A DNA stretch of 64,000 bases from Styela clava. Its lineage: Eukaryota. Location of the stretch: NCBI RefSeq assembly GCF_964204865.1, contig NC_135264.1, forward strand, positions 11,098,001-11,162,000, read 5' to 3'. Position numbers and translations under genes: made by a program. The notes beneath the pieces were generated by a model. The model saw nothing but the letters and a program-made list of their open reading frames with translations. It was not told the origin of the DNA and made no database searches. Of the stretch, positions 35,801 to 64,000 are shown in pieces; positions within the stretch are counted from its first letter, which is position 1, and the number at the start of each line of letters is the position of its first letter.

Positions 35801-36662
35801 TTCTTTACTTGTTACAGGCCTGGATATTACTTTCAATGAATAAGCATTCCACACAGCCGTGTAATATACTGTTACTGATAGGCCGGCGTAGGTCGAATGA
35901 CAACATTTTATACAAACGTCTCAAATTATAGGAAGTTTCCATTTTTAAAACCTATCTTTTTATGTGTACGAAATTTAACAACTTTTTTTAGGTAATTATA
36001 TTCATTTAGGAAAATCTTGAAAGCAAATATGAAAATAAAATGTTAACACAAGGTAATATCTATCGCCAGTTGTTGGAACGTTGGACCAAACTGCGTTAAC
36101 ATGATAGGGTTCAATGCCCTTATCCAACATCACATATGGGGCAATGAGTTGGATGAAACCTATTCAAAATGTGAAGATTTTGCCACATTTATATTATAAT
36201 CTTGACAGATAATAAGCACGAGCAAATGATGCTTATTCAGTACCGGCCTAATTTATACAGTGTATGTCATAGAACAGATCGATCGCAAGGCAGCCTTGGC
36301 TGCAACAGAGAAAATGTGTTTCTATCAATACATTATGAAGCTTCATCGTGATAAAATGAAGACAAAATACATTCTAGGTGCCGCAGATCGATTGCTTCTA
36401 CTTTAAGTCATAACAAATGCGCTTTAAGATGATGCATCAACACTTCAAACAGATTTAGAAAAGACATCAGGTCGACAATATAGTCTCTTTTTTTTCTTTC
36501 AGATTTTCGCATTTTCTCAACGGAATTGTTCTAGGACTAATGATTATTTAGCATAAGCTAGACGTAATAGTGTGGTATACAAGGACGGAAAGATTTGTAT
36601 AATACTCTAAATTAAAACGGATAACTGAAAATTTACCAATGGTTTGAGATAATTCAAAAGCT

Positions 36663-39371
36663 ATGGATCTAAGGATTGTGTTGATTTTTCTTGCAATTTT
36701 TGATCAAGGTAAATATAATTTTCTGTTATATTATCGAGAAACTTTTTCTATTCCCAGTGGTAGAAATGTTGGCTTAACAGTTGTTGCCAAGTTTGAGGTC
36801 TCAGCTCCAAGGCCAGGTAAGATTGCTGATTGTCAAACCGAAGTGAGCCAATCAGTATCGTCATGAATGGAAAAATTCAGGCTCCAATGTGAGCAAATGT
36901 TTGTGCGCATGATTGCACTTTTGTAATAGCCTCACGGGAAAGGTTATTTTAGTGTTTTTGCCATACAAATACAGTTTCCATAGCACTTCTGCATAACGTT
37001 CATAAGATGCATCATATTGAGATATTTGCATGGTGTTTAGAGTTCTTTTTTATTATCCATTTATATCATATCATTACCTTTCAAAGCAAAATCATGACCC
37101 CACATTCAGACGCCTAAAGACACCCCGTCACAATTAAGATTACAAGCAAAAATCGAATATTATTTTGTCCTAACCTAACTGTCATTGATGTTACATCCAA
37201 AAAACGTGGAATCTCCAAAATCAATTTCCTGATGTCAATTTACAATTTAATTTAATTTTTCAGTCCGGTCTTCTCATGGCTTCTGTTCATATAGCACTTT
37301 CATTGAAAACAATGGATTCTCTGAAACCGGTTCCTTTGGAGTATGGGACCCAGAAGGTTATAGAAGAAATGAAACCTGCACACTGGAAATTAGAAGACCT
37401 AATATGATGTATATGTCTTTAATGATAGACTACGAGAAATTTGATTTACAGGAATATTCTACGTGCGCAGATTCTATACAATTGCCAACAGGTAAATAAC
37501 ATTTGAACGATAATTCTATAAATTATATTAGGTAACCAATTACTGGTGGAAATGGATGCGTCATCAGGGCAGACTACGTCAATGTCTTATGCATATGCAT
37601 TAGCACAACGTCTAATTAGTTAATCGACTTCATGCAAAAGTCTATTATGCTAATTTTTCAGATTAATTTTGCCGAGCATAAATCAAGTTAGAATATTCAG
37701 ACCCTCAATTTGAATAAATTATGCACATTGAAATAGAATGACATTTTGCTATCATTTCAATCTTTGAGATCACTTTATATTTGTTTCGTTTATTCATATT
37801 GATATACATATATTCATATTCATTTATTTTCTGTAATTTTGATAAATATTTAACTAAGAAATTTATACCACAGGTACGAGAATGTGCAAGGAGCCACAGA
37901 ACTGTCAAATATTCACATCTTCTAATCACGAAGTATCATGTTTTGGAAAATTAAACGAACACTGTGATGTATTTTCGGTCAGTGCTGATACGTGGCCGAT
38001 GAAATTTGTTTTTCATTCCGCCGCCAATTCAACTATTCATCGAATGCACAGGGGATTTGAAATAAGTTATCAACTTTTACAAAGTTGTAATGGTAAGCAC
38101 TTTTACATATTAGACATTTACATAACATTTCATATATACGTCAGTGTGGCCGAAATCCAGGCCATTCATTCAGTCATTGCAGCTACTGTATGCCCAAAAA
38201 TCGTTGCCTCATTGTCGGCCCCGCATTTTGATTGGAAAAACGTTGCCCTTACTTATACCATGTACGAATTTGGATTTCGTAGTTTGTTCGATCTCAATCA
38301 ATCTATTCGACTGATTTAAAATGTTTACGTTCAATTCAATGTACAGTAGTGAAAATTAGCACATAGCAGGTATCTAATGATAAGAAAAATGTCCCATCCA
38401 ATAATGAATAAAGTACATTTGTGTCCAATTTATCATATATTGAATGTACTGTTCACATACCAATATTAACGTTTTCACATACAGGTACAGGAATTGATGA
38501 AGAGAAATGGATTCACTACGGACATAAAACAAATAAAGTACCAATAAGTGTACCAGTTGCTGTACTCATTGCGTTAGCAATACTAATTTCAGCGCTGATG
38601 TCTTTTCGATGGTGGTATTCATATCATTTTTATTTGTTTCATTGTTATTATGTTGAAGCGCAAGCTTGCCTCATTGACCAAGCAGATTTTGCTGGAGGAA
38701 AAGATCAAAACAGGAGCACAAAGCCAACTTGATTATAAAAAAAAACTTTTCCACCTTTGTAATGTATTAATTTGAGTAGGCTATTTCCACTCTCTATACA
38801 TAAACTTGAATGACAATTATTATCCACACTAGTAAGGGTAAAATATTGCAGTATATTATTACTGAATTAGCTTGATTTAAGCTCAGCCTCCATATAAATT
38901 TGAAATATTATTTAATTAGCATACAAACTGTTGCACGTGAATAGTTGACGCATGACTTATGATAATTAAAACAAGCCAAATATAATACTTCACAAAATTT
39001 CATGTGAAATATATTCAAGTGATCTAAAAAACAATCTCGGTTAAAGTATATAGTTCTATTTAATCGTGCATTTCAGGGAAAGGCGATATCGAACATCAGA
39101 CGTTAGGGAAGAAACGCGACCTCTAACGGCGACTTCTAATAATGTACACTCGTCCTATGGTGGCGGTATAATGTCCGATGATTCTGAAAACGAAGCTGAA
39201 ACCGTTTATACAGTTGCTGATGAATCCTCCAGAAATTACAACGAATCACCAAAATTGCCAAAGCGAGAATTAAGAAGGCAAGATAATGTGAATGACGAAG
39301 AAAATCTTACTATCGATCGATCAGGAATGGCTTCAAAAAGAAATACTATATATGCACATCTGATTCATTGA
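36663..39371 (+). CDS. CUB-like domain single-pass receptor 1 (~304 aa)
   Basis: Exons 36663-36708 (signal peptide), 37264-37491 (YRRNETCTLEI...FDLQEYSTCADSI), 37874-38092 (FVFHS...RGFEISY), 38485-38611 (TM), 39077-39371 (tail with VYTVADE, NTIYAHL). An extra small juxtamembrane exon near 38683-38763 is possible. Confidence 0.8.
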
Positions 39372-41156
39372 GACTTTTAGAAGTGCTAGACGTGACAGAA
39401 TCGGAATAAAAGATATTGGTAAATCCCTGGTACAATGCAAATTGAAAGCTACATGGTGAATATTCCATATATTGGAACGAATCTTATATTTTGACCAACT
39501 AATTCAAACATTTAGTATTTTATAAGTATAAGTGTTGTTGTATGAGTGTCGTTTTGCTTTCACATGTGGTTTTCATATATTAATTCAATGATTTCAATGG
39601 CACGTGGTCCAACCACCTTGCTGCTTACTAACTGTGATGCTTAAGGACCAAGCAACAAACGGGAAAGTTTATAGGGCTAAATAGGTATGGATAAAATACC
39701 ATTTTAGACCCCAAAAATAAAACGAGGTAAATAACGTATTATCTAAAATATTTTATTTTATGAATCCAGATAAACAAATTGCATGATATTTTGACACTAA
39801 CATTGAATCAGTGTCACTCAGCTTTACAAACGCTGAAAATCAAGATTAAAAACCTTTTATAGTATATCAATGTAATATTCCCTGAATTGCCCTTGGTCAA
39901 AGCTCAAACACGTACTTTTATAACCCTTATTTTCCCTCCAATTGACTCCCTTCACCTAGTTGAATAATAAACAAGATCTATTTTTAGTTATCAACTCCAG
40001 ATATATTAATAATTAAAGTGAAGCGATATTCCAATTTGGATGGAAAATTTTATAGATTTTTATGGCACCATTGCAGTCATTTTCTGGATAAGATTTTTTC
40101 AAATATTTCAAAATTATCAAGTCGAATTGAACAGGTACATTGTGACTTGGATGTAAATAGCAGTAAGTGTGATTAGTTTTTGGCAACTTCTCTACCTGTT
40201 TTGTGTGTATTACGTTTTCCTATTTGTATCGTGATCATATTGTGAATATTGTAAATAAAAGAAGTTAAATTCACTGACGTGTATTCTTGACTCATTGAGA
40301 TTATTTTATAGTGAGAGGTGTTGTCATAGTTGACACATGTGAAGTGAAATAGAGTTTGGTAAAAGATTAAGTCAATTGCAAATGATGGAACAAATTGAAA
40401 CATGAAAAGTTGGAACATCAAAAGATGCAATATTGAGTATTTTTTAACAGGATTTCTTTGCAGTCGTAGTCAAAAGATTAAACAAGTGGAAAGATAAAGA
40501 GAGGGAAGGTGCGATTAAGGACAAAATATAAAAACTTCCCCTTTCATGTTGTAGGATTTGGAAATTCTGACATAATAGCTACCAGAGCATTTTGACATTG
40601 TATTTAGAAGTGTACTTGCCTAAAAATCTCTCTCTCTCTCTCTCCCACTGATTAATTCCTCGGCAGACTATGGCGAAACCAAGATAAGGATAGGATTAGC
40701 ATATTTGTCTCATGATTCCGATAACACGAAATAATCATATACATAGCAGACCGAACAACGTTCGATCCAGATCGAGAATAGCTTGTTATTTCATTGATTC
40801 AGTTGCATGAGCGTGGAAACGGAGGTAACCGACGAGTAATTAGGTGAAACTCCCTATAAAGGTAACGTCTGATAACAGTCTTGCACACAATCCTTCAAAC
40901 ATTAAACTTATGATTATTGTAATCTTAAAATTTTGCAATGTTTACTCGCCATTGTTTGAGGTGGAGAGGTAGGTGAAGCATTCCGTCATTCGCTTGTTGA
41001 AAGACACGAACCACACGTTTCATTCAAGGAAAAGTAGCAGATATGGCCTTCATCAATACAAAGTATAAGTCTTACAAAAATCTCAATACTGTTTTTTTTT
41101 GACACTCAGAAATATTCTAATAAAATACACAATATAAGAGTAGCACAAAGTTCGAT

Positions 41157-44092
41157 ATGTCAACATGGGATACAGGAGGATTCAAAATACAAGTATTGGC
41201 AATATTCTTCATCTATGGTAAGGCAGTGTAAGTTTTTATTTTTACTGGTTTTGCTGGTATTGTCACTCAATAACATTTAGTTTTGTATCGTAAAAGCAAG
41301 TTTAATAATGCCCTAGTACAAATCACAAAATTCTAAACCTAAAAGCTAATTTTCAATTTATTAAACATTTTATCGAAATAATCATACCAATACATATAAT
41401 TTACAGCTATCGACATAGTACATGCAACCTCGTGCGAAGGAATGACATCACCAAAATACTTGACTACGTCACGAGGCAACATTACATCACCGAGATACCC
41501 TTTCGAGATTCCAAGTAGTCAAAGATGCGAATGGGTTTTTCAAAACTTCGGCACAGATGATATTCTCTTAATAAAGATACATGAAATGTCTTTAGGCGAT
41601 CTATTATCAGTACTGTTTCTAAATTTTGTTACAATGCCAAATGGTGAGTGAAACAATAATCCATTTTTTCTGAGGGACACTTAATACAAAGTTGACCAAT
41701 TTTTAATGCATGATTTCAGGTTGACTTCTATAATAAGGGGGGAAATTTGTCCTAAAATATAAATACCAAGATGAAATTAATCAAATATACAAGCAAGGCT
41801 AGTATCGTCATCCCAAACATTCAGCTCTTGTTAAACACTTGGTCGACTATATTGTTAGTCGCTGGGCCCAAGTGGTGGAGCAATTCTTTAATATCACATC
41901 AGCAAAATTGCAAATATTTGAAATAAATATAAATGAAAACATATTTTTCATTCTGGATTCATATATTCAACCGACTTTATATCAATATGACTAGTTCTAT
42001 TTCGTGGTTATGTTCACACTGTCACCTTACTTTGTAACGCGATGTGTCTTTTGAAGGTTACACTTTTCTTCGGTTTGCTCGCAGGATTCGAGATAAAGGG
42101 AGAGAGGAAAAATGAATGTATAGCCTACGGAGAAAACCAAACGATATCAAGATGCTCAGAAAACGTCAAAAACGCTTTGAAATTTTGTTCATATCATAAA
42201 ATAGACAAAACTAAACTTCCTCCAAAACTACGATTCAGATCATCAAGTGTTCAACTGTCAAAGAATCGTTTTTCACTCTCGTACGAAATATTGCAATGCA
42301 GAGGTAAGAACTATTGAGACTCTAGCTTTAGCCTATTCGCCTTTAATAAGAATTGGGCACAAAGCCTAAACACAACACTTGGAGATGGTAGATGCGATAA
42401 AATAGGAAACAATTTGCTTTGAAAAAACTAAGCATCTACTTTCCTACGAGGTGGTAAACAGTGCTGACGTTGAACCCTAGCCTACGACGATAACACGGGG
42501 TTCCAACTTGGGGTCAGTATGATTGCCATAAAATGAAAAACCGTAAATTCCCCATAAAATTTTCAGACCATTTAATTGATGCTGTGACGACTGGTTCTCC
42601 ACCATTCGACTCCAAACCATACATCATAATTCCATCTGCATTAGCAATATTGATATTTATAATTGCTGGAACTATGATCGGAATGTTTATTGTAATAAAC
42701 AGGTTAGTACACTTGATTTATATACACATATTCAAATACACATACCAACATTCATATTACGCAAGATAAAGCTGAACAGTATAGTAAAGTTGATAGTTGT
42801 TAGTAGAAGTATGAAACAAAGTAAACATCTTATCACTGAACATTCAATTTTAGTTTTCTCCTACTGGTACACATGCTTGAATTTTTGCTGCGTTGTTTAT
42901 TTCACATACCTTTCAAAACAATTTCGAGTATATTTGAAATCGTGGAGATTCACATAAAACTTGTCACAAGTTGTTGGTTGGTTACTATTTCTATATGCGA
43001 CCAGGTTACATAACGTTGAATATTTCACATGTCTTGTGAAACATTTTCGAATGGATTTGAAATCGTAGAGATTCACACAAAATTGCCACATATGGTTGGT
43101 TGGTTAATAGTGCCTACATGTGACCAGATTACACAAAGTTCAATATTTTACATGTCTGGTAAAACATTTTCGAATGAATTTGAAAACTTGGAGATTCACA
43201 TAAAATTTTTCACATATGGTTGATTAGTTATTGGTGCCTATATATGACCAGGTTACATAAAGTTGAATATTTCACATGTCTGGTAAAACATTTTTGAATG
43301 AATTCGAAAACTTGGAGATTCACATAAAATTTGTCACATATGGTTGGTTGGTTACTGGTGCCTGTATATGACCATGTTACATAAAGTTGAATATTTCACA
43401 TGTCTGGTGAAACATTTTTTGAATGGATTTGAAAACTTGGAGATTCACATAAAATGTGTCACATATGATTGGTTGGATACTGGTGCCTGTATATGACCAG
43501 GTTACATAAAGTTGAATATTTTACATGTCTTGTAAAATATTTTATGAGTAAAGTTTGAAATCGTGGGAATTCTCATAAAATTTGTCACATATGATTGGTT
43601 GTTTATTGGTGCCCGTATGTGTCCAGGCCACATAGAGGTGAATATTTGGTCACAATAAATTTAAACCAAGCTAGAATTTGTAAGCTAAACGTAACCGTTT
43701 TGAACACACACACACATACAGGCTGGCATTCCAACGAAAATATAATGCCTTCAATTTCCAGGTCTAATCATCCGAGCCGTGATCGTATTCAGAGTGTCGA
43801 CAATGTATATGAGTCTCCATTATCTGAACCTATGGAACGCGCCAACACATACGATAGTATACGAGTTCCTACTGATTTAAACAGAGAAGACATGGCAAGT
43901 TATCTATCTCATCGACAATTAGTTCAATATCCACAACAACCGGAAGAAAAAAAGGAAAGAAAGAAAAAAACGGATACGCGACCTATGGCCCCAATACCGG
44001 AAGTAGATGGGTACATAGATATTCAACCACTAACCGGTAACTCTCCACAGTCAAATAATGATTATGCCACTATGAGACGAAGCGATCAATAA
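41157..44092 (+). CDS. CUB-like domain single-pass receptor 2 (~327 aa)
   Basis: Exons 41157-41217, 41407-41643 (C..RGNITSPRYP...CEWVF), 42085-42303 (LRFRSS..FSLSY), 42567-42702 (TM), 43762-44092 (tail with VYESPL, TYDSI, GYIDI, DYATM). Confidence 0.82.
42880..43660 (+). repeat. Minisatellite, ~123-bp unit x ~6, in intron 4 of CUB receptor 2
   Basis: GGAGATTCACATAAA...GGTTGGTTG...GACCAGGTTACATAAAGTTGAATATTTCACATGTCT recurs at about 42944, 43067, 43191, 43314, 43439, 43565. Confidence 0.92.
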
Positions 44093-46052
44093 AAATAAAA
44101 TTCCTACTTTGAATAAAATATTACTCAAGAGGTCAAAGGGTAATTAATATCATTTACATTCGGAACCACTTATTTTTACATTGCGCATCATTAGCTTGCT
44201 TTTTGCGAATAGATATATTTTCAGAGATTAATTTGGTTGGCAGATTGGAACGAAAACAAAATATAAGAAAGCTTCGTGTTATTTATGCTGTACTTTAAAT
44301 CAGAAAATGACAAGGACATTTATTCATAATAATAGTTTTAAATAAACTATGTTTATTTATCGAATATTATACGATACTTCTATTCATTCAAATTTTCTTG
44401 AAAACGTTTATGTTTATGACTGTTTCGAATACAGTTTTTCGTTTGAGCAAACAAATTTATTTTGAGTCATTATTTCTGCAAATTAACTCCAGCTTATGTT
44501 AAATATTCACTTATTTCTTATATATATCTGGAAAAAAATATGTATATTTCAAGTCTGTATGAAATTTTTTTCGCGTTCTCAAAGACCCACAAGTAAAAGT
44601 TGGTCTTAGACGGAAAACAGAGGTTAGTGTCTTTTACTTCAAACAATGTTTATAAGGATTTTACACGTTCACTCAGACGAGGCCTTGATAGCCAGATATT
44701 TGATCTTTGCGCTGTTCAGTGTGTTTAGCATTGCCTCCCAGTGTAACATAGCTTATACTAGCGAAGATATACGCAAATATCACGGAGTTGAGGATATTAT
44801 ACAGTTCGAAACCTAAATGTACTTATAATCATCATTTGGTAGTTGGATACAATAATGATGAAAGGAATAACAAAATGCAAACGGCAATATCTAAAAATGA
44901 TAACGTTATACACGAAAATAGCCTAAATGGATATGGAGACGGAGCTAGTTAGGCAAGTGAGTTAAATTACACAAAGAAAGGGGTATTAAACCATATTCTA
45001 ACGCATTCATTTTTCTTGAATACATATCAATTTTCCTTCTGGATGCCCGTCAGGTCAATTGTCAGAATGACTACATCATTATTCACGAAAAGCGCAAACA
45101 TATTTCCATGTAAAATTTAACTTCAAGAAGTATATGCGTCATTTCCGTTTTTTGCGCGTCATCCCAAGGGGAAACGAACGACAGTGTTTGGTATAATGGA
45201 TAGAGTACTCCAAATATATCCAATTTGACATCAGTATGTGACTGAACGCGCAATAAAACGAATATTGCTTAAAAAGATACTGCGAAAATGACGTATTGAT
45301 ATCTATAAATATAATCTATTTTTAATCGATCGGTAAATATTGATAAAAATATATATCAAAGTTGATCAAATACCTATCGAAAGTGTACTTTCGAAGAAAG
45401 GTAACGAATCATTTTGTGAACTTAGCAAATGTCGTCAGTGTTTTGCATGCAAAATTACGTCATAAAATGGCATTAAATGAATTCACAGCTCAGGAACACC
45501 TGAATAGAAACATGCGTTTCCTACCGGCATGATTTATCAGTTATAACTTATATGTTAAATGGTCAGAGTAACATGATGTGTTTAACATAGAAAGCAACGG
45601 CAAGGAACGTAATCAAAGAAGACATATTTGTTACAGACACTTTTGTAAATGTACGAAAATGTTGTTCGGCACTACTGATATGAGTTTTAGGTGGACATTG
45701 TATTGAATGCAGAAATGACTGTGAACCGGAATGCAGGACATCGGAAGTTCCTGTGGTGTTACTTTCGATCCAAAGCTATATTCACCGAAGCATCGTTTTT
45801 GGTAGTTCGTCGGGTGTTTTAAATTTGTTAGAATGCACTCTTTTCTTCAAATCTTAAATGCAGTGCACGTCTTGTGCAGTTCTCGAGATAAAGGTCCGAA
45901 AACGGTCATCCGTGTAGAGATTGTGTGTGTGTGTGTGGCGGGGTGTCTGGGGGCAGGGGTTTTATACACTTTCTATTCGTTTAGCAAAGGGTTTTATTCC
46001 ATATATACTATATCTCAATCGTTTTTTACAGTTCAGAACTATAAAAATCATA

Positions 46053-48247
46053 ATGTCAGCACAGTTGTTGCAGCGCTGTACAGCCCTGGATGTTTTGCTT
46101 GTAGCATTCTTGATGACAAATTTTGCCACGTACGGATGTAAGTACCGTTTCAAATGAAATTGCAAAACGTAACAAAAAAATTTAAATATCCTAACTGTAT
46201 ATGAGCCATACAAACGCTAACGAATTTTGATGATTTTAAAACACTGACTGCAGAATGAACTTCACAATCCCAAGTATACGCTAAACCTTAACTGCTATTG
46301 GTTTTGCACGGCTCTAAATCTTTTGGATTCTTTGTGGTCTGTTTTAGTTTTTGGACATTTATCATCCACATATTATTTTAAAACAGATTGCACTTCTCTC
46401 ACAGCGAGTCCAAATTCTAATTGTGAACCTGCTAAGGAACGAAATCTGAGGGGATTCACATCTTGGGAAGTTAAATATGACAGACAAAAAGATCCGTATC
46501 CATTACAATGCAAATGGGATATGCATCCACCTTCTAAAGAACATCTGATATTTATACACATTTTCAATCTTAAATTAACAACCGACGAAAACCAGTGCTC
46601 AGCGAATCTGCTCATAAATGGTGAGAATAGTCTTTTCTAGTATCAATAGCTGAAAATGCAAACGGTCAGCCAATAATGTGCCGTTTTTCTTGACATAGTC
46701 CACGCCATACCCAATTTTGTACGTCTTTGGTGGGGTGTGGTACCTGACTTGTGATACTAAAATGACTTAGTACGTTTTATATGAAATTGAATAAATTTGT
46801 CTATGAGCCTATGCTGTGTTTGATGCAATTAAAAAGTCACATTTATTGAATATATGCATATCTCGTTAGACAATTAAAAATATACATATATTTATTTTGT
46901 GAATATAACAATGGAAATTTGATATTTACAGGAATGAATATGTGTCAACCGCGAAAGAAAAATTGTTTAATCTTTCGCCTCAGTGACAACCAGAAATGCC
47001 AATCATTATCAGATTCAAAGGAATACAAACACTGTTCCGTTAAGGCTTGGAAGGAACCTACCTATTCTATACTATTTACGGCTAACTTATGGGCTGTAGC
47101 TGAAATAAAACAGCAGAACGTACATTTTATATACAGTTATTTGGATTGTTCAGAAAACTACGGTGGAATTTCTGGAAAAAGTATAGGTAAAGCGAAAGTT
47201 ACTTCGAAAACTAGAATTAGATTTATTATTGCGTTATATAATGCTTAAATTATATACTTTATTACGTTTTTGCAAAAAACTCAAAATATATATATATGTA
47301 TAAATTCTTCAAGGCCTTTTTTTGGGGATTGGATATTTGAGCATTTGATAAAATTGTTTTTCATTTTCAAAAACTTCACGTTTTGTTTTTGAATCTAGAA
47401 ACCGGTTTTCCAATACCGGGCAAAAACAAGACTCTTCCCACCACTTCAACAACGACAGAAATCTCATCACGAACGAATACCTCAAGGAATCGAATACTTT
47501 ATTCAACAACCATTCCATTATCTGCAGCATTATTAATTTTAGTAATTGTTCTGCTGGGGATAATGATAAAAAGGTAATTGACTTTGAATAACAAAAATAT
47601 TGTTATGATTCGTTTATGAAACATTCATACTAAGGGATAGATAATTATCGTTCGCCTTCTGAGTTAGGATATTAGTAATATATATACTTACGCCAAACAC
47701 ATGGTCTTTCTTGTTCACATATTCATTGAAATGCCAGATATCAGAATACTTTTTTATTCTAATTTGAATGCTCTTCTTATTACTGGCCGGCTGTACTGTT
47801 CACCAGTCCTACGTAGTAACTTTTGTCATTTTAGTATAAGTCAAAATTTACAAAGACTATACGTCGTGATATATCAAAATAATGCCACCTCATTTACAAA
47901 TAATTCAATTTTCATATTATCAACACAAAAAAGAAACTTAAAATTTAGACTTATCGTATTACAGAAAAATCCATAGGTCAAAGGTCGACCCGGATGCGGA
48001 AGAAAATAGCGATCAAGACAACCAGGGCGAAGATACATATACAATAGCAGATGAAGCGCCTGCGATTTATGAAACTATAGGAACCAGCAATTATGAAGTT
48101 ATTAAAAGTTTTAAATTTCGGAATAAATTTGAGGATAAAATCGAAAATTCTGAACGAGAAATAGTTGATAATATTATTTATGATGCAAGCCAATCGCCAA
48201 CCAGATTATCGGCTGTAAACGTAGCATATGATATTTCCGTTGATTGA
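46053..48247 (+). CDS. CUB-like domain single-pass receptor 3 (~339 aa)
   Basis: Exons 46053-46137 (signal peptide), 46387-46620 (YPLQCKWDM..IFIHIFNLKL..QCS), 46932-47186, 47399-47573 (S/T-rich stalk + TM), 47977-48247 (tail with TYTIADE, IYETI, SNYEVI, NIIYDA, VAYDI). Confidence 0.78.
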
Positions 48248-49742: not shown

Positions 49743-50288
49743 TAAGGATGCCAAGTATGAGTACTTACAAGTATTCGATTCTTATCCGATTCCTAAATTT
49801 TCGATTCCGATTCTCGATTCCGAATCTCGATTCCTCGACATATTACCGAAAAAATATACCCAGCACCCAAGCAATACCATATGAAATCAAGCAAGACAGC
49901 GATGTTCGAATTCTGGACGGACAAGAAGGCCGAAACTATGTAGTATGGGTATCCAATCTGCCACAGGAGACAAAACCGCACAAAAAAAAACGAATCCCTC
50001 AGAACCCACAGAGATTTTTAAAATAAATAAACGTTAAAGCCTACTAGCGATATTTATAATATATATATTATATATAGTGAAGTTTGCGGTGTCGTAGCAA
50101 CTCAACATAGCAGTGAAGCAGTTTATACATATATATATATGTGAAGAAATTGCCACAAAACGTTACACATTGTTTGCAACCCAAGTTTCAATCTCGAGAA
50201 TCGATTCCAGTGCATCGGAATCGATTCTACTCGATTCCGCGAAGAATCGATTCTGTAATCGAATCCGGACTCGATTCCGCCATCTCTA
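49743..50288 (+). mobile_element. hAT-type MITE, copy 1, upstream of the fucosyltransferase gene
   Basis: Ends TAAGGATGCC...GCCATCTCTA; TCGATTCC subterminal repeats; near-identical inverted copy at 57207-57708 (near-identical ORF-track peptides MPSMSTYKYS...). Confidence 0.85.
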
Positions 50289-56500: not shown

Positions 56501-59254
56501 TTAATTACTGAATTATTCACGTAATCTCTGCAATTGACAATTTGAAGGAATATGAAACATTACAAAAATAAGGGACAATTATGGGGCTTGTTTTATTAGA
56601 AAAATTTGTCATAAAAGTTCTCATCTAATGTGGGAATTCAAGAACTGCTGTAAATTGATAATGATATATCGACGTACACTTGATATGTTATTTTAGTAAA
56701 CAAGATAAAAACTGATGAATATATCGTGTATTAAGTATACGCGATTATTATCAAAGGCATACCAGAATTGGAATAACGTTTCCATTTTTTTTTTCAATCA
56801 GATCACCCGGTATCAGTTCCTCTGTATCCAAACTTCAGTCCAGCAGATAAACAAGTTGAACTGGAGGACGTACCGACAGCTTACAAAACTAATGATAAAT
56901 GTGCTTTATATTGGTTCCCGTTCAGAGAATTTCACATCGATTTTCCATATCAAGGTAAGTTTTTCTTATCAAAAATATCAACAGTGTGGTGTTCTTGCGA
57001 GTCTAATCGAAGTAACTTCATTACGATGAATTGTAAAAATAATGATTTTTCAGTCATAATAACACGCTTGTCGTTTTTTTGTTTGTTATAATATTATATT
57101 TCCGAATCAAGCATTGCTCCAAACAAGCCCCAGGCAAAGGGTTCAATATTGGTATGTAGTTACTACGTTTAGAAGAAATATCGCCGCGATATGACCTACC
57201 TCGGAGTAGGGATGGCGGAATCGAGTCCGGATTCGATTACAGAATCTATTCTTCGCGGAATCGACTAGAATCTCGAGTTTGAAACTTGGATTGCAAACAA
57301 TGTGTAACGTTTTGGGGCAATTCCTTCACATATATGTATAAACTGCTCCACTGCTATGATGAGTTGCTACGACGCCGCAAACTTCACTATATATATATAT
57401 ATTTCGCTAGAAGGCTTTAACGTTTATTCATTTTAAAAATGTCTGTGGGTTCTGAGGCATTCGCTTTTTTTTGTGCGATTTTGTCTCCTGTGACAGATTG
57501 TATATCCATACTATTTAGTTTCGGCCTTCTTGTCCGTCCAGAATTTGAACATCGCTGTCTTGCTTGATTTCATATGGTATTGCTTGGGTGGGTATGTTTT
57601 TTCGGTAATATGTCGAGGAATCGAGATTCGCAATCGAGAATCGGAATCGAAAATTTAGGAATCGGATAAGAATCGAATACTTGTAAGTACTCATACTTGG
57701 CATCCTTACCTCGGAGGCGAGTGAGGTAATCCCCAGTTTATGAAGTCACAGTTCACTTGGACTAATATTCGGAGTTTAAAATTCAATACCCTTTTGTTTT
57801 CTCATTTCACAGATGCATTAACAACAACGAAAGTAAAAGATTTACAAAATATTAACCAACAGAAAGCATCAATAATACACGGAGACATTCTCAAATATTT
57901 ACAACCACCCGAGCCAGTACAAGTATGGGCAGATGAATTTCGTAAACAAGCACTTCCACGGGATTATATTGCTCTTCATTGGAGATTTGACGAAGAGGTA
58001 AGTCTCTAATGTCTATTAATCTAACAAATTTACTGAAGGCAGTTCACAGCAGATTTTATAAAACCTTATTTACAATTTTGATGAGGATGTGGTTGGTGTA
58101 TGGATTCTTTTCCCCCTCAAAGACAGTTGAGTTAAATTCAAGAGCTAGCACTAATAGTTTGGTCAGTGCTGTAACAAAATAATGATAATCTGTATGGCCA
58201 TCGATCGTAATTTTTGCTCAATTTCTACTAGTTCGTGTTTAAAAAAAAAATCCAAATTTGTATACAGCGCAAAGTAGAATACGAGCATTTTTCTGTTTCT
58301 TATGTCAATACCAATAAATATATATATTGAAATGTAAGTATTTTTTCCTGTTTCAGGATTTCTTCGACTATTTGTGTAAAGAAGGATTAGGACGAAACGA
58401 ATTTTGCGAAGGTGTGAGGCGAGCTCACAATGCATCAGCCATTGCGACATCAATACTGAGACGGACTTATGATATAAAGAAAGAAGTTGGGAAAACCACA
58501 ACTTCGTTATATTTTGCAACACCTCCAACAATAAAAACATTGGTGGATGACATAAAAACAATATTAAATAACAATAATCTTGTTCGTAACATTTTACAAA
58601 ATTTGAAAATTTTTGAAGAAGTTCAACCACCCATTGTGATATCAGTTAAAGATTTGAAAAGCTTTCTTCAGCAAAGGCACAGGTATGAAATCAGTAATGT
58701 CATCAGTAGAAATTGCAAAAGGTAAAAATAAAATTTTAGGAAATTTGAAAAGATTTTATTATTATCTTGAAGCTGATTAAAATGCAATATTCGTATATAC
58801 TCGTATGCAATATTCCTATTCGTCGCGACATAGCATCTGACAATTCTAATCATTTTTTGCATTGTACATTGCGCTTGATCGACAATATATCTCTTGTGTT
58901 ATTTCCCTGAAAATCAAACTCACTGTTTTTATGGTAGGGGCATTCAAAAGACGACTGGAGACATATCCCATCCCCATTTCTAACGAATCTTTTCATGTCT
59001 CCTTGTTCAGTGGATGTGACATGACGGATCCGCGACAACTTCCTGATACAATCTCCCAAATTGAGATGAAGCTGTGCGAAGAGAGTTCTTCATTTTTATG
59101 GTCTCGTCAAAGTACTTGGTCTAAGAATGTCCTCGTGCAGAGATATCTTTCGAAAGGAAGAACAATCAAAGAGCAAGATTTTTCTGTTTCTGATTATACC
59201 TTAAAAATTATGGATGGAAAATTAAAAAAGAGAAAAAAGTTTAAATTTATTTGA
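50506..59254 (+). CDS. GDP-fucose O-fucosyltransferase family (POFUT-like, GT-B fold), type II membrane protein
   Basis: Exons 50506-50915, 52525-52717, 52945-53080, 54202-54276, 56802-56954, 57813-57997, 58357-58721, 59011-59254. N-terminal TM; motifs NGPNNQ...ALLLNRTLVLP, DYIALHWR, IEMKLCEESSSFLWSRQSTWS. Confidence 0.82.
54721..56333. mobile_element. 1.6-kb non-autonomous DNA transposon in a fucosyltransferase intron
   Basis: 17-bp perfect TIR TAGGCTTGCACGTAATT / AATTACGTGCAAGCCTA; TCACATG duplicated on both flanks; clustered AATTACG subterminal repeats at both ends. Confidence 0.85.
57207..57708 (-). mobile_element. hAT-type MITE, copy 2, intronic
   Basis: Ends TAGGGATGGC...GGCATCCTTA; perfect 8-bp TSD CCTCGGAG at 57199-57206 and 57709-57716. 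Confidence 0.92.
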
Positions 59255-61986: not shown

Positions 61987-64000
61987 ATGAGTTACTCAAA
62001 CATGGGATCGGATGATACACGAAGAAGTTGGTCTGAGCCCCCACATATAGGCAGTAAATATATTTCCGACAAGTCAAAAACAAATCCAGCATCTTCATGG
62101 AGAGATATGGGAGTGCGTAGGACATTTCCTGTAGCATTACATCAAGCAAAACTTGAGCCATGGCACTCGGCAAAAGTCATTAATTATTCACATCGGACAG
62201 CATCACTAAGGTTGTCAAAGCTGAGTATATCAAATAAAAGAAAGGGAGTACGGATAAAAGCTAAGAAGACGATTCTGTCATTGAGAGGTACAGAATTGCA
62301 AAATCCACCTAAAGATCTCTTCGAAATGACAGATTTGGAATCTCTATCTATGAGTCCAGAGAGAGAGTCGTGCTTGGAGGTAAATATAATCTACAGTGAT
62401 GATTTTTGTTACTTTGAGTAAAATATATATTCAATTGACAACTCGAATGAATAAAAATATCAATAAGTTATAATAGCTTATGTTAAAAGCATCTCTAATA
62501 TTCCCTTCGATTTAGCAGTCATTTCTTTCACACTAATTCGAAGCATACTGTGTAACAACTAAGATTTGTTGATATGCTGGATTAGGGTAGATATAAAAGT
62601 TTGGCTAACGATTGGTCAAAGCGTATGCTATGTCATTCTTGTACAAAGTTGTTCGCAATCATTGTTTCACATATTCAGTTCAAGCTGACCGAAGTTCCGA
62701 AAGAGATCAAAAACTTAAACAACCTTCGTCAATTAGTGCTTGACACAAATGAATTGAGAGAAATTCCAAACGAAATATCAGATTTGAATCAACTTGAAAC
62801 ACTCACGTTAAGCAACAATCGACTTGCTGAGTTGCCAGGAGGATTTGCGAAATTGTCAAGTTTACGAAGCCTACATCTTGCTAATAACAGGTAAAACAAC
62901 ATATAGATTGTCTCTCCATTTCATAATGGTAATATCAACCGATATAAATATTGGATGAGTAGAAAAAGTAAACATTGCAAAAACAAAAGTTTGGAATTAT
63001 GTTGTTGAAGTTGGGGAAATAAATTGATGCTATGTTGAGAAAATATTAATAAAGATAATATATATATTTGTTCACAATTTTGTTGTAATATGACCTATCG
63101 CACTTGATTAATTTTCGGTTGGTAATATCCAAATCAATTGATTTGCATTACATTCTTCGAAGATATTCGTTGTTCGACAGGCAATAAGAGCATTTGTTAA
63201 CAAGTGGTCCGTCGATTCATTGTATATAAATTCAATCCGAGCGAATGAATATAGTATTTTGGGCAAAAAAAGCATTTAAAGTTTCAATCAATAGATTATA
63301 ATTAGCCTCTTGTCACGTTAAGTCAAATTTATAATTAGAAAATCTTCAAATCTGGTAGCCTACAATTATAATAGATCGCTATTTTTGTGCATGGAGTGAT
63401 AAGCACATGCAAGCCTTTATTGAAAGGCTGTTAAAAACGCGAAGTCAACTTTTTTTTTGAGTTTGTGTTGAAAATTTAACTTCGATTATCACCTTTAAAG
63501 TCTAAAATCAAGACTCCATGGAATTCGAAATTACGTCTCATTGACGCCAATGAACTCTTGCCCAACTCCGACTCCATATGCGAATAAACGGATAATACAA
63601 ATTTTAGCACTTGTTGGCGACAGGCTAATCATTCTCTTTAACAACATCTAACGACACGAACCAGAAGACTATAGTGTGCTCAAGGTCGGAGAAAATCCTC
63701 ATACGCCATACATGTTCCGAATTCGACTCTGTTTCTGAAATGAGACAAAAATCCTGATTCATTTACCAGTAGTTTCACGATCGGTTTTTAACTTTCGTTT
63801 GATTTTCAATTTTCTACCTTTAAAATCGCCAAGTTTAATTTAGCTGACTGATTGTTACTAATCATGCGTACCGTACCGATGCTTCTTTTTGAAGATTCGC
63901 TGAGTTTCCCAACGAAATTTGCGGGCTGGTCAGTCTCTCGTTTCTGGATCTCAGTGACAACTCAATACGAGAGATTCCTGACGAATTTGATTGGTTATCT
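61987..64000 (+). CDS. Leucine-rich repeat protein (5' part, runs off the window)
   Basis: Exons 61987-62379, 62679-62890 and 63895-end join in frame; LxxLxLxxNxLxxLP repeats (LRQLVLDTNELREIP, LETLTLSNNRLAELP, LSFLDLSDNSIREIP). Confidence 0.88.

What the first reader, a model, noticed from the sequence alone, without database searches (positions are those of the whole stretch)
36663..48247. Tandem cluster of three rapidly diverged CUB-TM receptors with ITIM/ITSM-like tyrosine tails
Seen: three same-strand genes share a 5-exon plan with intron phases 1,1,1,2 (signal peptide / CUB N-half / CUB C-half / TM / tail). Exon 3 is 219 nt in both genes 1 and 2, yet the ectodomains share little beyond Cys and hydrophobic spacing. 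The tails are low-complexity with several Tyr motifs: SNYEVI (matches ITIM S/I/V/LxYxxI/V/L), TIYAHL (ITSM-like), IYETI, TYDSI, GYIDI, DYATM. Established: ITIM/ITSM motifs recruit SH2 phosphatases, and diversified tandem receptor clusters are typical of immune and allorecognition loci. Inference: a lineage-specific family of signalling receptors that uses a CUB-like rather than Ig or lectin ectodomain.
Basis: partly seen in the sequence, partly recalled or inferred. Interest (0 to 1): 0.8.

Follow-up and report, generated by a model that had tools for sequence, protein, structure and literature searches.

The report
Three sea-squirt CUB-fold tyrosine-tail receptor genes
Three neighbouring genes of the sea squirt Styela clava encode small single-pass surface proteins with a very divergent CUB-type outer domain and a tyrosine-bearing inner tail; they are a real but unstudied outlying cluster of a larger species-restricted family, and the proposed immune (ITIM/ITSM) signalling is not supported beyond chance.

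Summary
Three same-strand five-exon genes (36663-39371, 41157-44092, 46053-48247) have GT-AG introns in phases 1,1,1,2. Each encodes a signal peptide, a two-exon CUB-like domain, a membrane helix and a tyrosine tail.

- **Gene 1:** it is Styela clava LOC120333829 ("uncharacterized protein"). All four of its splice joints appear in RNA contigs.
- **Genes 2 and 3:** these remain sequence-only models. Only one RNA contig lies on exon 3 of gene 2.
- **CUB fold:** supported only weakly by sequence. The ESM Atlas model's ten structural neighbours are all CUB proteins.
- **Kinship of the three genes:** detectable only through exon 3 (z about 5) and a short tail box shared by genes 1 and 3.
- **Tail motifs:** there is one strict ITIM (0.6 expected by chance), no strict ITSM and no ITAM. 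Only Yxx-hydrophobic motifs are mildly enriched (6 against 2.9).
- **Other species:** no relative of gene 1 turned up among 1.84 billion proteins.
- **Other DNA in this genome:** this scan has already noted similar CUB-like tyrosine-tail clusters on other DNA. I tested one, 4 Mb away on the same contig, and it shares the exon plan and the cysteine pattern.

A receptor role is plausible. An immune or self-recognition role remains a guess.

The parts
36663..36708 (+). gene 1 exon 1: start codon and signal peptide (MDLRIVLIFLAIFDQ...)
   Evidence: Joint 36708|37264 is seen in RNA contigs X1, X2 and X5.
37264..37491 (+). gene 1 exon 2 (228 nt): CUB N-half with Cys1, Cys2 and Cys3
   Evidence: Pfam CUB E 0.045, HMM positions 18-59. 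Joint 37491|37874 is seen in X1, X2, X5 and X7.
37874..38092 (+). gene 1 exon 3 (219 nt): CUB C-half with a four-cysteine insert; hot spot of allelic amino-acid change
   Evidence: Seven of the 11 haplotype differences lie here. Joint 38092|38485 is seen in X1 and X2.
38485..38614 (+). gene 1 exon 4: short stalk and membrane helix; alternative donor 3 nt upstream gives isoform X2 (one Trp less)
   Evidence: AF2 gives a confident helix at residues 187-214. Joint 38614|39077 is seen in X1, X2 and X7. Isoforms.
39077..39371 (+). gene 1 exon 5, coding part: 98-aa acidic tail with 5 Tyr (VYTVADE box, TIYAHL) and the stop codon
39372..40218 (+). gene 1 3' UTR, with a 32-nt indel polymorphism at 39513
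   Evidence: RNA contig X1 runs to 40218 (tables 5c and 8).
41157..41217 (+). gene 2 exon 1: start codon and signal peptide
   Evidence: sequence only
41407..41643 (+). gene 2 exon 2 (237 nt): CUB N-half, the most canonical of the three (GNITSPRYP...CEW)
   Evidence: Pfam CUB E 2e-4, 21.9 bits against a cut-off of 21.4..
42085..42303 (+). gene 2 exon 3 (219 nt): CUB C-half with a cysteine-rich insert
   Evidence: One 181-nt RNA contig of X5 lies at 42108-42288.
42567..42702 (+). gene 2 exon 4: stalk and membrane helix
   Evidence: sequence only
42932..43647 (.). 124-bp tandem repeat (5.8 copies) filling most of gene 2 intron 4
43762..44092 (+). gene 2 exon 5: 110-aa tail with 6 Tyr (NVYESP, TYDSI, GYIDI, DYATM) and the stop codon
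46053..46137 (+). gene 3 exon 1: start codon and signal peptide
   Evidence: sequence only
46387..46620 (+). gene 3 exon 2 (234 nt): CUB-like N-half; no Pfam match
46932..47186 (+). gene 3 exon 3 (255 nt): CUB-like C-half with a cysteine-rich insert
   Evidence: z 4.7 against gene 1 exon 3.
47399..47573 (+). gene 3 exon 4: Ser/Thr-rich stalk and membrane helix
   Evidence: sequence only
47977..48247 (+). gene 3 exon 5: 90-aa acidic tail with 5 Tyr (TYTIADE box, IYETIGTSNYEVI) and the stop codon
   Evidence: The tail box is shared with gene 1.

Best explanation
The stretch holds three anciently diverged tandem paralogues in the sea squirt Styela clava. Each encodes a small type I membrane protein made of a signal peptide, one CUB-fold domain, a short or mucin-like stalk, one membrane helix and a 90-110-residue acidic tail with 5-6 tyrosines. 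The C-terminal half of the CUB domain carries an extra cysteine-rich loop.

The three genes are an outlying cluster of a larger family of such genes, which has so far been seen only in Styela clava and is scattered in several clusters.

The most likely mode of action is that of a ligand-binding surface receptor. The CUB face, including the variable cysteine loop, binds an extracellular partner. The tail tyrosines, mostly in acidic Yxx-hydrophobic contexts, are phosphorylated and dock SH2 proteins, as in vertebrate CUB proteins such as CDCP1 and DCBLD2.

Shown: the gene structure, transcription and splicing of gene 1, membrane topology features, and family membership. Moderately supported: the CUB fold. 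Inferred: ligand binding and phosphotyrosine signalling.
For: **Gene models**
- Canonical splice sites and phases 1,1,1,2 in all three genes.
- All four gene 1 joints appear in RNA contigs from two runs, and some of them in two further runs of two other studies.
- The gene 1 model is identical to RefSeq XP_039257146.2.

**CUB fold**
- Pfam CUB on exon 2 of gene 2 scores 21.9 bits, above the cut-off; gene 1 gives E 0.045.
- The exon 2 alignment against a profile of this genome's own CUB domains gives hhalign E 2.2e-5. Exon 3 aligns to the last CUB strands, HMM 83-109, with P 0.02.
- The alignment over CUB positions 1-109 is co-linear.
- All ten structural neighbours of the ESM Atlas model are CUB proteins, TM 0.58-0.64 over residues about 23-170.
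- The intron splitting the domain lies at HMM position about 62, as in many other CUB genes of this genome.

**Paralogy of the three genes**
- Exon 3 z-scores are 5.2 and 4.7. The tail z-score is 4.1 for g1-g3.

**Wider family**
- A gene at C19:7.132-7.134 Mb has the same phases, a 228-nt exon 3 and the same cysteine pattern.
- The four-sequence profile then finds six such exons in that cluster and further ones on C19, C6, C3 and C1.

**Constraint and variation**
- Gene 1 has 9 synonymous and 8 nonsynonymous SNPs, pN/pS about 0.24.
- Seven of the 11 amino-acid differences between two haplotypes lie in exon 3 (Fisher P 0.005).

**Tail**
- Yxx[LIMFV] occurs 6 times against 2.9 expected (P 0.05), and there is a tandem YETI-x4-YEVI (P 0.016).
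Against: - Sequence evidence for CUB is weak for gene 1 and absent for gene 3. The full-length gene 1 protein has no Pfam CUB hit above E 0.06, and there is no PDB sequence match.
- My own AlphaFold run without an alignment failed, with pLDDT 40.6. The fold therefore rests on a medium-confidence Atlas model (pLDDT 0.56).
- Genes 2 and 3 lack splice evidence.
- No phosphorylation, ligand or tissue data exist.
- Tails are not conserved among the three genes, apart from a 20-residue box in genes 1 and 3.
- The YxxPhi enrichment is marginal. It fits endocytic sorting as well as SH2 docking.
- The link to the wider family rests on low-scoring profile matches (16.9 bits before iteration) plus shared gene structure.
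Confidence: 0.6

Rival explanations
1. The three genes are inhibitory or dual immune or allorecognition receptors, whose ITIM/ITSM motifs recruit SHP-type phosphatases, and they sit in a diversifying immune-type cluster.
For: - One strict ITIM (SNYEVI, gene 3) and one loose ITSM (TIYAHL, gene 1) exist.
- Allelic amino-acid change is concentrated in the exon 3 loop.
- A related styelid, Botryllus, uses clustered type I receptors with ITIM, hemITAM and YxxI/L/V 'core' motifs for allorecognition, and ascidians have SHP, Src and Syk homologues (PMC12582321).
- The family is clustered and species-restricted.
Against: - The strict ITIM count equals chance (1 against 0.6, P 0.46). There is no strict ITSM and no ITAM.
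- No such motif is shared among the three genes.
- The cluster has only three ancient copies, and no close paralogues of any exon exist in the genome.
- Overall pN/pS is 0.24.
- No expression data tie the genes to blood cells or gametes.
- Styela clava is solitary.
Confidence: 0.12
2. The proteins are cargo, adhesion or endocytic receptors. The Yxx-hydrophobic motifs and acidic clusters would be AP-2 or sorting signals rather than phosphotyrosine docking sites.
For: - The only motif class above chance is Yxx[LIMFV], which is also the AP-2 sorting consensus (the consensus is established knowledge).
- The tails are acidic, with 18-21 Asp+Glu residues.
- CUB domains commonly bind extracellular protein ligands (established knowledge).
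Against: - Several tyrosines sit in contexts typical of kinase substrates, with acidic residues upstream (EDTYTIADE, ETVYTVADE).
- The tandem YETI/YEVI pair resembles SH2 targets.
- The two readings are not exclusive.
Confidence: 0.2
3. Genes 2 and 3 are silent or decaying copies, and only gene 1 is a working gene.
For: - In four RNA runs, gene 2 is covered by a single 181-nt contig at depth 2.4 and shows no joints.
- Neither gene 2 nor gene 3 has a protein confirmed in the databases I could reach.
Against: - Both keep complete open frames over five exons, with canonical splice sites, signal peptide, cysteine pattern and membrane helix. This is unlikely in decaying DNA of this age.
- Contigs cannot show absence of expression (notes in the output).
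Confidence: 0.1
4. The genes are fast-evolving orthologues of a conserved CUB membrane protein such as CDCP1, DCBLD1/2, NETO or LRP3/12.
For: - The general layout of CUB plus membrane helix plus tyrosine tail recalls CDCP1 and DCBLD (from my own knowledge).
- LRP3 appears among the structural neighbours, but only through its CUB domain.
Against: - There is a single CUB domain only. No LCCL, FA58C, LDLa or CDCP1-type CUB Pfam match appears on any exon.
- No protein outside Styela clava matches gene 1 exon 3 or the whole gene 1 protein.
Confidence: 0.03

Closest known systems
Vertebrate CUB-domain phosphotyrosine scaffolds (CDCP1, DCBLD1/2)
   Same: Both are type I membrane proteins with CUB ectodomains and unstructured tails. 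In the vertebrate proteins the tail tyrosines are phosphorylated and dock SH2 proteins (from my own knowledge; not tested here).
   Different: Here there is one CUB-like domain only, with an extra four-cysteine loop. There are no LCCL or discoidin domains. No sequence similarity or orthology was detected. The genes are tandemly clustered and species-restricted.
Botryllus schlosseri fester co-receptors (FcoR), PMC12582321
   Same: Both occur in styelid ascidians. Both are clustered type I receptors with fast divergence. FcoR tails carry ITIM, hemITAM and 'core' YxxI/L/V tyrosine motifs, and core-type YxxI/L motifs are what the present tails mostly contain.
   Different: FcoR ectodomains are immunoglobulin-superfamily domains and are paired with fester-family genes. 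Their polymorphism and expression in the vasculature are documented. Here the ectodomain is CUB-like, canonical ITIM is at chance level, and no partner genes, tissue or function are known.
Canonical CUB domains (PF00431) of Styela clava, e.g. CUB-Sushi genes on C2:24.1 Mb
   Same: The predicted jelly-roll fold is shared. Cys1-Cys2 are conserved, as is the closing 'F-x-S...GF-x-x-x-Y' strand pair. The phase-1 intron lies at the same HMM position, about 62.
   Different: There are about 25 extra residues with four cysteines in the C-half. Scores are below or at the Pfam threshold. Gene 2 lacks Cys3. The domain is followed directly by a membrane helix and a tyrosine tail rather than by further extracellular modules.
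Other CUB-like tyrosine-tail receptor clusters of Styela clava noted earlier in this scan (e.g. C19:7.10-7.13 Mb)
   Same: The five-exon plan with phases 1,1,1,2 is the same. Exon 3 is of similar length (228 against 219 nt) and has the same cysteine spacing. The phase-2 intron falls just after the stop-transfer residues, and the tail is tyrosine-bearing with an IYET string as in gene 3.
   Different: Exon 2 and the tails are not alignable. Each cluster has its own tail. The present trio has no recent duplicates or relics. Its relation to the large arrays reported on other contigs was not tested.

Membership tests
CUB domain (Pfam PF00431) | Score at or above the Pfam gathering cut-off (21.4 bits) | tested here: inconclusive
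   Gene 2 exon 2 scores 21.9 bits (N-half only). Gene 1 exon 2 scores 14.5 bits. Gene 3 and all three exon 3 peptides have no hit. The whole gene 1 protein has no CUB hit; the best is CUB_2 at E 0.06. hhalign of the exon 2 alignment against this genome's own CUB profile gives E 2.2e-5; exon 3 gives P 0.02 at HMM 83-109.
CUB domain (Pfam PF00431) | Ten-stranded jelly-roll fold | tested here: inconclusive
   The ESM Atlas model of the gene 1 protein (pLDDT 0.56) has ten of ten structural neighbours that are CUB proteins, TM 0.58-0.64. My AlphaFold run without an alignment failed, with pLDDT 40.6. No confident model or PDB fold search was therefore possible.
CUB domain (Pfam PF00431) | Two conserved disulfides (Cys1-Cys2, Cys3-Cys4) | tested here: inconclusive
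   Cys1 and Cys2 positions are present in all three genes. Cys3 is present in genes 1 and 3 and absent in gene 2. There are four to five further cysteines in exon 3, so the pairing cannot be read from sequence.
ITIM-bearing inhibitory receptors | Cytoplasmic [S/I/V/L]xYxx[I/V/L], present beyond chance or conserved among relatives | tested here: not met
   There is one match (SNYEVI, gene 3) in three tails against 0.60 in shuffles, P 0.46. It is not shared by genes 1 or 2.
ITSM-bearing receptors | Cytoplasmic TxYxx[V/I] | tested here: not met
   There is no strict match. TIYAHL fits only the loosened pattern with Leu (1 against 0.15 expected, P 0.14).
ITAM-bearing receptors | Yxx[L/I]-x6-12-Yxx[L/I] | tested here: not met
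   There is none. Gene 3 has YETI-x4-YEVI, and that spacing is too short.
CDCP1 / DCBLD / NETO / LRP3-12 orthologues | Their multi-domain ectodomains (3 CUB; CUB+LCCL+FA58C; 2 CUB+LDLa; CUB+LDLa repeats) and detectable sequence orthology | tested here: not met
   There is a single CUB-like domain and no other Pfam domain on any exon. No protein from another species was found with gene 1 exon 3 or the whole gene 1 protein. Genes 2 and 3 were searched only exon by exon.
Styela clava CUB-like tyrosine-tail receptor family (this scan's earlier notes) | Five-exon plan with phases 1,1,1,2, and a split CUB-like domain with a cysteine-rich exon 3 | tested here: met
   The gene on L056 (C19:7.132-7.134 Mb, minus strand) has exons of 240, 228, 226 and 187 nt, all AG/GT, with the same phases. 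The trio's exon 3 profile hits its exon 3 end to end (E 2e-4 among 540 frames). The iterated profile finds 6 copies there and others elsewhere.
Styela clava CUB-like tyrosine-tail receptor family (this scan's earlier notes) | Shared tail sequence or motifs | tested here: not met
   Tails of genes 1, 2 and 3 and of the C19:7.13 Mb gene find only themselves or their own cluster in the genome. Only a short IYET string is common to gene 3 and that gene.
Immune-type diversified tandem receptor array | Many recent, similar copies with birth-and-death turnover, and excess nonsynonymous variation in the binding domain | tested here: inconclusive
   The trio has only three ancient copies and no relics. 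Gene 1 has overall pN/pS 0.24. In exon 3, however, the RNA SNPs split 5 nonsynonymous to 2 synonymous, and 7 of 11 haplotype differences lie there (P 0.005). The sample is too small for a selection test.

The most novel reading that the evidence does not exclude
The trio, and the wider Styela clava family it belongs to, is a polymorphic non-self or gamete recognition system built on a variant CUB fold. The variable cysteine loop of exon 3 would be the recognition surface, and the tail tyrosines would feed Src/Syk/SHP-type signalling. This would be a CUB-based counterpart of the immunoglobulin-based fester/FcoR system of the related colonial ascidian Botryllus.
Probability: 0.1. Interest if true: 0.75.

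Novelty: new variant of a known kind. Interest (0 to 1): 0.42.

Why it matters
Clustered single-pass receptors with tyrosine-motif tails have arisen many times on immunoglobulin and lectin folds. Tunicates are the closest invertebrate relatives of vertebrates. A species-restricted, fast-diverging family on a modified CUB fold would be one more independent solution. It would also give a handle on how such receptor families are born, and it sits next to the Botryllus allorecognition system.

For this particular trio the value is more modest:
- It extends that family to a deeply diverged outlier cluster.
- It gives one fully transcript-confirmed member, LOC120333829, which is currently annotated as 'uncharacterized' with no domain.
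- It points to the exon 3 cysteine loop as the place where alleles differ.
- It shows that the ITIM/ITSM label should not be attached to these genes on present evidence.

Tried and rejected
- **Joined models left out.** Genes 2 and 3 were therefore never searched, folded or looked up as whole proteins. For gene 1 the natural database proteins P0001, P0014 and P0015 were used instead.
- **Reads limit.** Read laying was limited to 6 kb and one call.
- **Genome-letter allowance.** The other family loci (C19:7.10-7.13 Mb apart from L056, C19:8.50, C6:18.5) could not be cut out.

**Searches that found nothing or failed**
- **Whole-genome exon 3 profile.** The three-sequence profile found only the trio. 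I first read this as 'a family of three'. The tool's first-look filter limits sensitivity.
- **Word-based protein search and PDB sequence search.** With the gene 1 protein these returned nothing beyond the query.
- **Other hits of the 1.84-billion-protein search (three read).** These are long multi-stretch proteins; the three I read are internal-repeat proteins. I regard them as spurious.
- **AlphaFold without an alignment.** The model was unusable, so no PDB fold search was run.
- **MAFFT alignments for a second fold job.** Alignments of the full protein with exon fragments misplaced the exon 2 fragments. No second fold job was run.

**Leads followed and dropped**
- **Own-genome hits of gene 2 exon 2 on C2:24.1 Mb.** These are ordinary CUB-Sushi genes, not family members.
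- **CUB array at C3:15.7-15.8 Mb.** It showed no membrane or tail exon within the flank held.
- **Literature.** The searches found no paper on such a family. The 'CUB' hits in the Botryllus papers are Current Biology DOI strings.
- **Minus-strand similarity of gene 2 exon 2 at 58874-59029.** E was 0.003 within the window, but the stretch does not look like a CUB exon.

Full report
**Setting.** The window is AT-rich (GC 0.29-0.38). It is position 11,098,001-11,162,000 of an 18.7-Mb contig of a 377-Mb assembly. Gene 1 of the finding is Styela clava LOC120333829. The RefSeq protein XP_039257146.2 (P0015, 305 aa, from a contig of exactly 18,707,400 bases) contains my five exon peptides letter for letter. 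The organism is therefore the solitary styelid ascidian Styela clava.

**Observation.** I read the sequence and fixed the boundaries by script.
- Gene 1: 36663-36708, 37264-37491, 37874-38092, 38485-38614, 39077-39371 (305 aa).
- Gene 2: 41157-41217, 41407-41643, 42085-42303, 42567-42702, 43762-44092 (327 aa).
- Gene 3: 46053-46137, 46387-46620, 46932-47186, 47399-47573, 47977-48247 (339 aa).

All introns are GT-AG and the phases are 1,1,1,2. Exon 3 is 219 nt in genes 1 and 2, and 255 nt in gene 3. Each protein has these parts:
- a hydrophobic N-terminus;
- a cysteine-bearing ectodomain split over exons 2 and 3;
- a stalk, Ser/Thr-rich in gene 3;
- a 20-25-residue hydrophobic helix followed by basic residues;
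- an acidic tail with 5-6 tyrosines.

**Transcription.** Nine small runs of the same organism held 6-14% of the words of a 10-kb query, the size of the exons. I laid four of them, from three studies, on 36640-42639.
- Two runs gave single contigs of 1887 and 1662 nt that carry all four gene 1 joints at exactly the predicted sites. The contigs run on to about 40218 as 3' UTR.
- Two other runs show some of the same joints.
- These contigs use the 38614 donor (isoform X1). RefSeq isoform X2 lacks one Trp, from a donor 3 nt upstream.
- Gene 2 was touched by only one 181-nt contig on exon 3.
- The 6-kb limit left gene 3 and the end of gene 2 unlaid.

Genes 2 and 3 thus rest on sequence alone. Complete frames, canonical sites and all architectural features after so much divergence argue that they are maintained.

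**Is the ectodomain a CUB domain?** By sequence, only weakly.
- Pfam CUB gives 21.9 bits (cut-off 21.4) on gene 2 exon 2 and 14.5 bits on gene 1 exon 2. It gives nothing on gene 3 or on any exon 3.
- The whole gene 1 protein has no hit better than CUB_2 at E 0.06, and it has no PDB sequence relative.
- I built a profile of twelve bona fide CUB domains of this genome. The exon 2 alignment matches its N-half (hhalign E 2.2e-5).
- The exon 3 alignment matches its last two strands in the right register (HMM 83-109, P 0.02).
- A forced alignment is co-linear over CUB positions 1-109, with about 25 extra residues in the C-half.
- The ESM Atlas holds the gene 1 protein. All ten structural neighbours of its own model (pLDDT 0.56) are CUB proteins such as MASP, C1r/C1s, LRP3 and ST14. 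TM is 0.58-0.64 over residues 23-170. Twenty-two of the 30 feature-based neighbours are in the CUB set.
- My AlphaFold run without an alignment failed, with pLDDT 40.6 and only the membrane helix confident. I have no confident model of my own.
- The domain-splitting phase-1 intron sits at HMM position about 62, where many other CUB genes of this genome are split. That part of the 'shared exon plan' is therefore generic to CUB genes.

Overall, a CUB-fold ectodomain with an extra four-cysteine loop is the best reading, at moderate confidence.

**Are the three genes kin?**
- Exon 2 peptides are not alignable above shuffles.
- Exon 3 links g1-g2 (z 5.2) and g1-g3 (z 4.7).
- The tails of genes 1 and 3 share a 20-residue box, E-[TD]-[VT]-Y-T-[VI]-A-D-E with a second Tyr ten residues further on (z 4.1).

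Together with the tandem position, the strand and the phase-2 intron right after the stop-transfer residues, this makes them true but very old paralogues.

**Are they a family of three?** The first whole-genome searches suggested so. The exon 3 profile and single-exon searches (exon 2 of genes 1 and 2, all three tails) found only themselves or generic CUB exons. Earlier notes of this scan report several clusters of 'CUB-like tyrosine-tail receptors' elsewhere in this genome, one of them 3.97 Mb upstream on the same contig. I tested that one.
- In 38 kb fetched there, the trio's exon 3 profile hits one frame end to end (E 2e-4 among 540 frames).
- The gene around it has exons of 240, 228, 226 and 187 nt, all AG/GT, with phases 1,1,1,2.
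- It has the same cysteine spacing in exon 3, a stalk plus membrane helix, and a tail with the tyrosine strings PVYSTIYETSYQYE and HLYSS.
- Adding it to the profile brings up six such exons at C19:7.10-7.13 Mb. It also brings up others at C19:8.50, C6:18.5, C3:22.2 and further weak ones.
- Two loci already held (C1:6.95 Mb, C3:22.25 Mb) show a CUB N-half exon followed by an exon 3 with the same cysteine pattern.
- A six-sequence profile lists 14 exons.

The tool's first-look filter caps sensitivity, so these are lower bounds. Tails are specific to each cluster. The trio is therefore a deeply diverged outlier of a wider Styela clava family.

**Outside the species.**
- phmmer with gene 1 exon 3 against 1.84 billion representatives found only the gene's own protein, plus a dozen long multi-stretch proteins. 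The three I read are internal-repeat proteins, and I regard the set as spurious.
- The word-based search with the whole protein found only itself.
- No Pfam domain typical of CDCP1, DCBLD, NETO or LRP3/12 is present.

The literature searches found no description of such a family.

**The tails.** I tested the motif claims against 20,000 shuffles of the three tails.

| Motif | Observed | Expected | P |
|---|---|---|---|
| Strict ITIM | 1 | 0.60 | 0.46 |
| Strict ITSM | 0 | 0.11 | 1.0 |
| ITSM loosened to Leu | 1 | 0.15 | 0.14 |
| ITAM | 0 | 0.04 | 1.0 |
| Yxx[LIMFV] | 6 | 2.9 | 0.05 |
| Tandem YETI-x4-YEVI | 1 | 0.02 | 0.016 |

The ITIM/ITSM label is thus not supported, and none of these motifs is shared by all three genes. 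What is real is an acidic, tyrosine-rich tail (16 Tyr in 295 residues). Most of its tyrosines lie in contexts that suit either SH2 docking or AP-2 sorting. In Botryllus, FcoR tails carry comparable 'core' YxxI/L/V motifs alongside canonical ITIMs and hemITAMs, and ascidians possess the downstream kinases and phosphatases (PMC12582321). Phosphotyrosine signalling is therefore plausible, but it is inferred.

**Variation.**
- Among four RNA runs, gene 1 shows 9 synonymous and 8 nonsynonymous coding SNPs, pN/pS about 0.24. Exon 3 has 5 nonsynonymous and 2 synonymous.
- The older RefSeq haplotype (P0001) differs from the window's at 11 residues. Seven are in exon 3 (Fisher P 0.005), five of them between codons 108 and 118 inside the cysteine loop. 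Only one is in the tail, and all tail tyrosines are kept.
- Genome-wide heterozygosity is about 1.72% (PMC7540406).

The gene is under constraint overall. Its extra loop is either relaxed or diversifying, and the sample is too small to decide.

**Verdict.** These are real, unstudied, species-restricted single-pass receptors on a variant CUB fold. They are part of a wider family that this scan has already met on other DNA. The immune/ITIM mechanism is a guess at about one in eight.

**Limits.**
- Only 6 kb could be laid with reads.

Noticed in passing
window 42932-43647: A 124-bp tandem repeat (5.8 copies, 86% matches) fills most of intron 4 of gene 2. This makes that intron about 1.06 kb, against 0.4-0.46 kb in genes 1 and 3.
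   Followed up: no
window 38611-38614: Two GT donors lie 3 nt apart at the end of gene 1 exon 4. They give RefSeq isoforms X1 (305 aa, WW) and X2 (304 aa, W). The RNA contigs laid here use the downstream donor.
   Followed up: partly
window 39513-39514: A 32-nt insertion relative to the assembly lies in the 3' UTR of gene 1. It appears in RNA contigs of two runs from two studies, so it is an indel polymorphism. The UTR also carries about 24 SNPs in about 850 nt.
   Followed up: no
window 37909-37946 (gene 1 codons 104-118): Six of the amino-acid polymorphisms seen (I104V, S108Y, H110Q, F115L, G116E, L118I) lie in and just after the loop bounded by two of the extra cysteines of exon 3, a candidate variable loop.
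   Followed up: partly
window 49748-50026 (+) and 57515-57703 (-): Two near-identical open frames (MPSMSTYKYSILIRFLNFRFRFSI...) lie in inverted orientation about 7.5 kb apart. They are probably copies of a repeat element.
   Followed up: no
window 62601-62894 (+): An open frame encodes leucine-rich repeats (LRQLVLDTNELREIPNEISDLNQLETLTLSNNRLAELP...). It is an exon of a neighbouring LRR gene.
   Followed up: no
window 58874-59029 (-): There is a weak similarity (33% over 54 aa; E 0.003 within the window) to gene 2 exon 2 on the opposite strand. It does not look like a CUB exon, so it is chance or a very old relic.
   Followed up: partly
G000:C3:15714168-15809810: A tandem array of at least eight near-identical single-exon canonical CUB domains (148-aa open frames) lies at 7-15-kb spacing. 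C19:9.35-9.39 Mb holds long open frames with many CUB repeats.
   Followed up: partly
L056 1049-1183 (-) (G000:C19:7131049-7131183): A short frame (NICNFTIGVCFILLQR) looks like a relic of the start of the exon 3 of the neighbouring family gene. This is consistent with copy turnover in that cluster.
   Followed up: no
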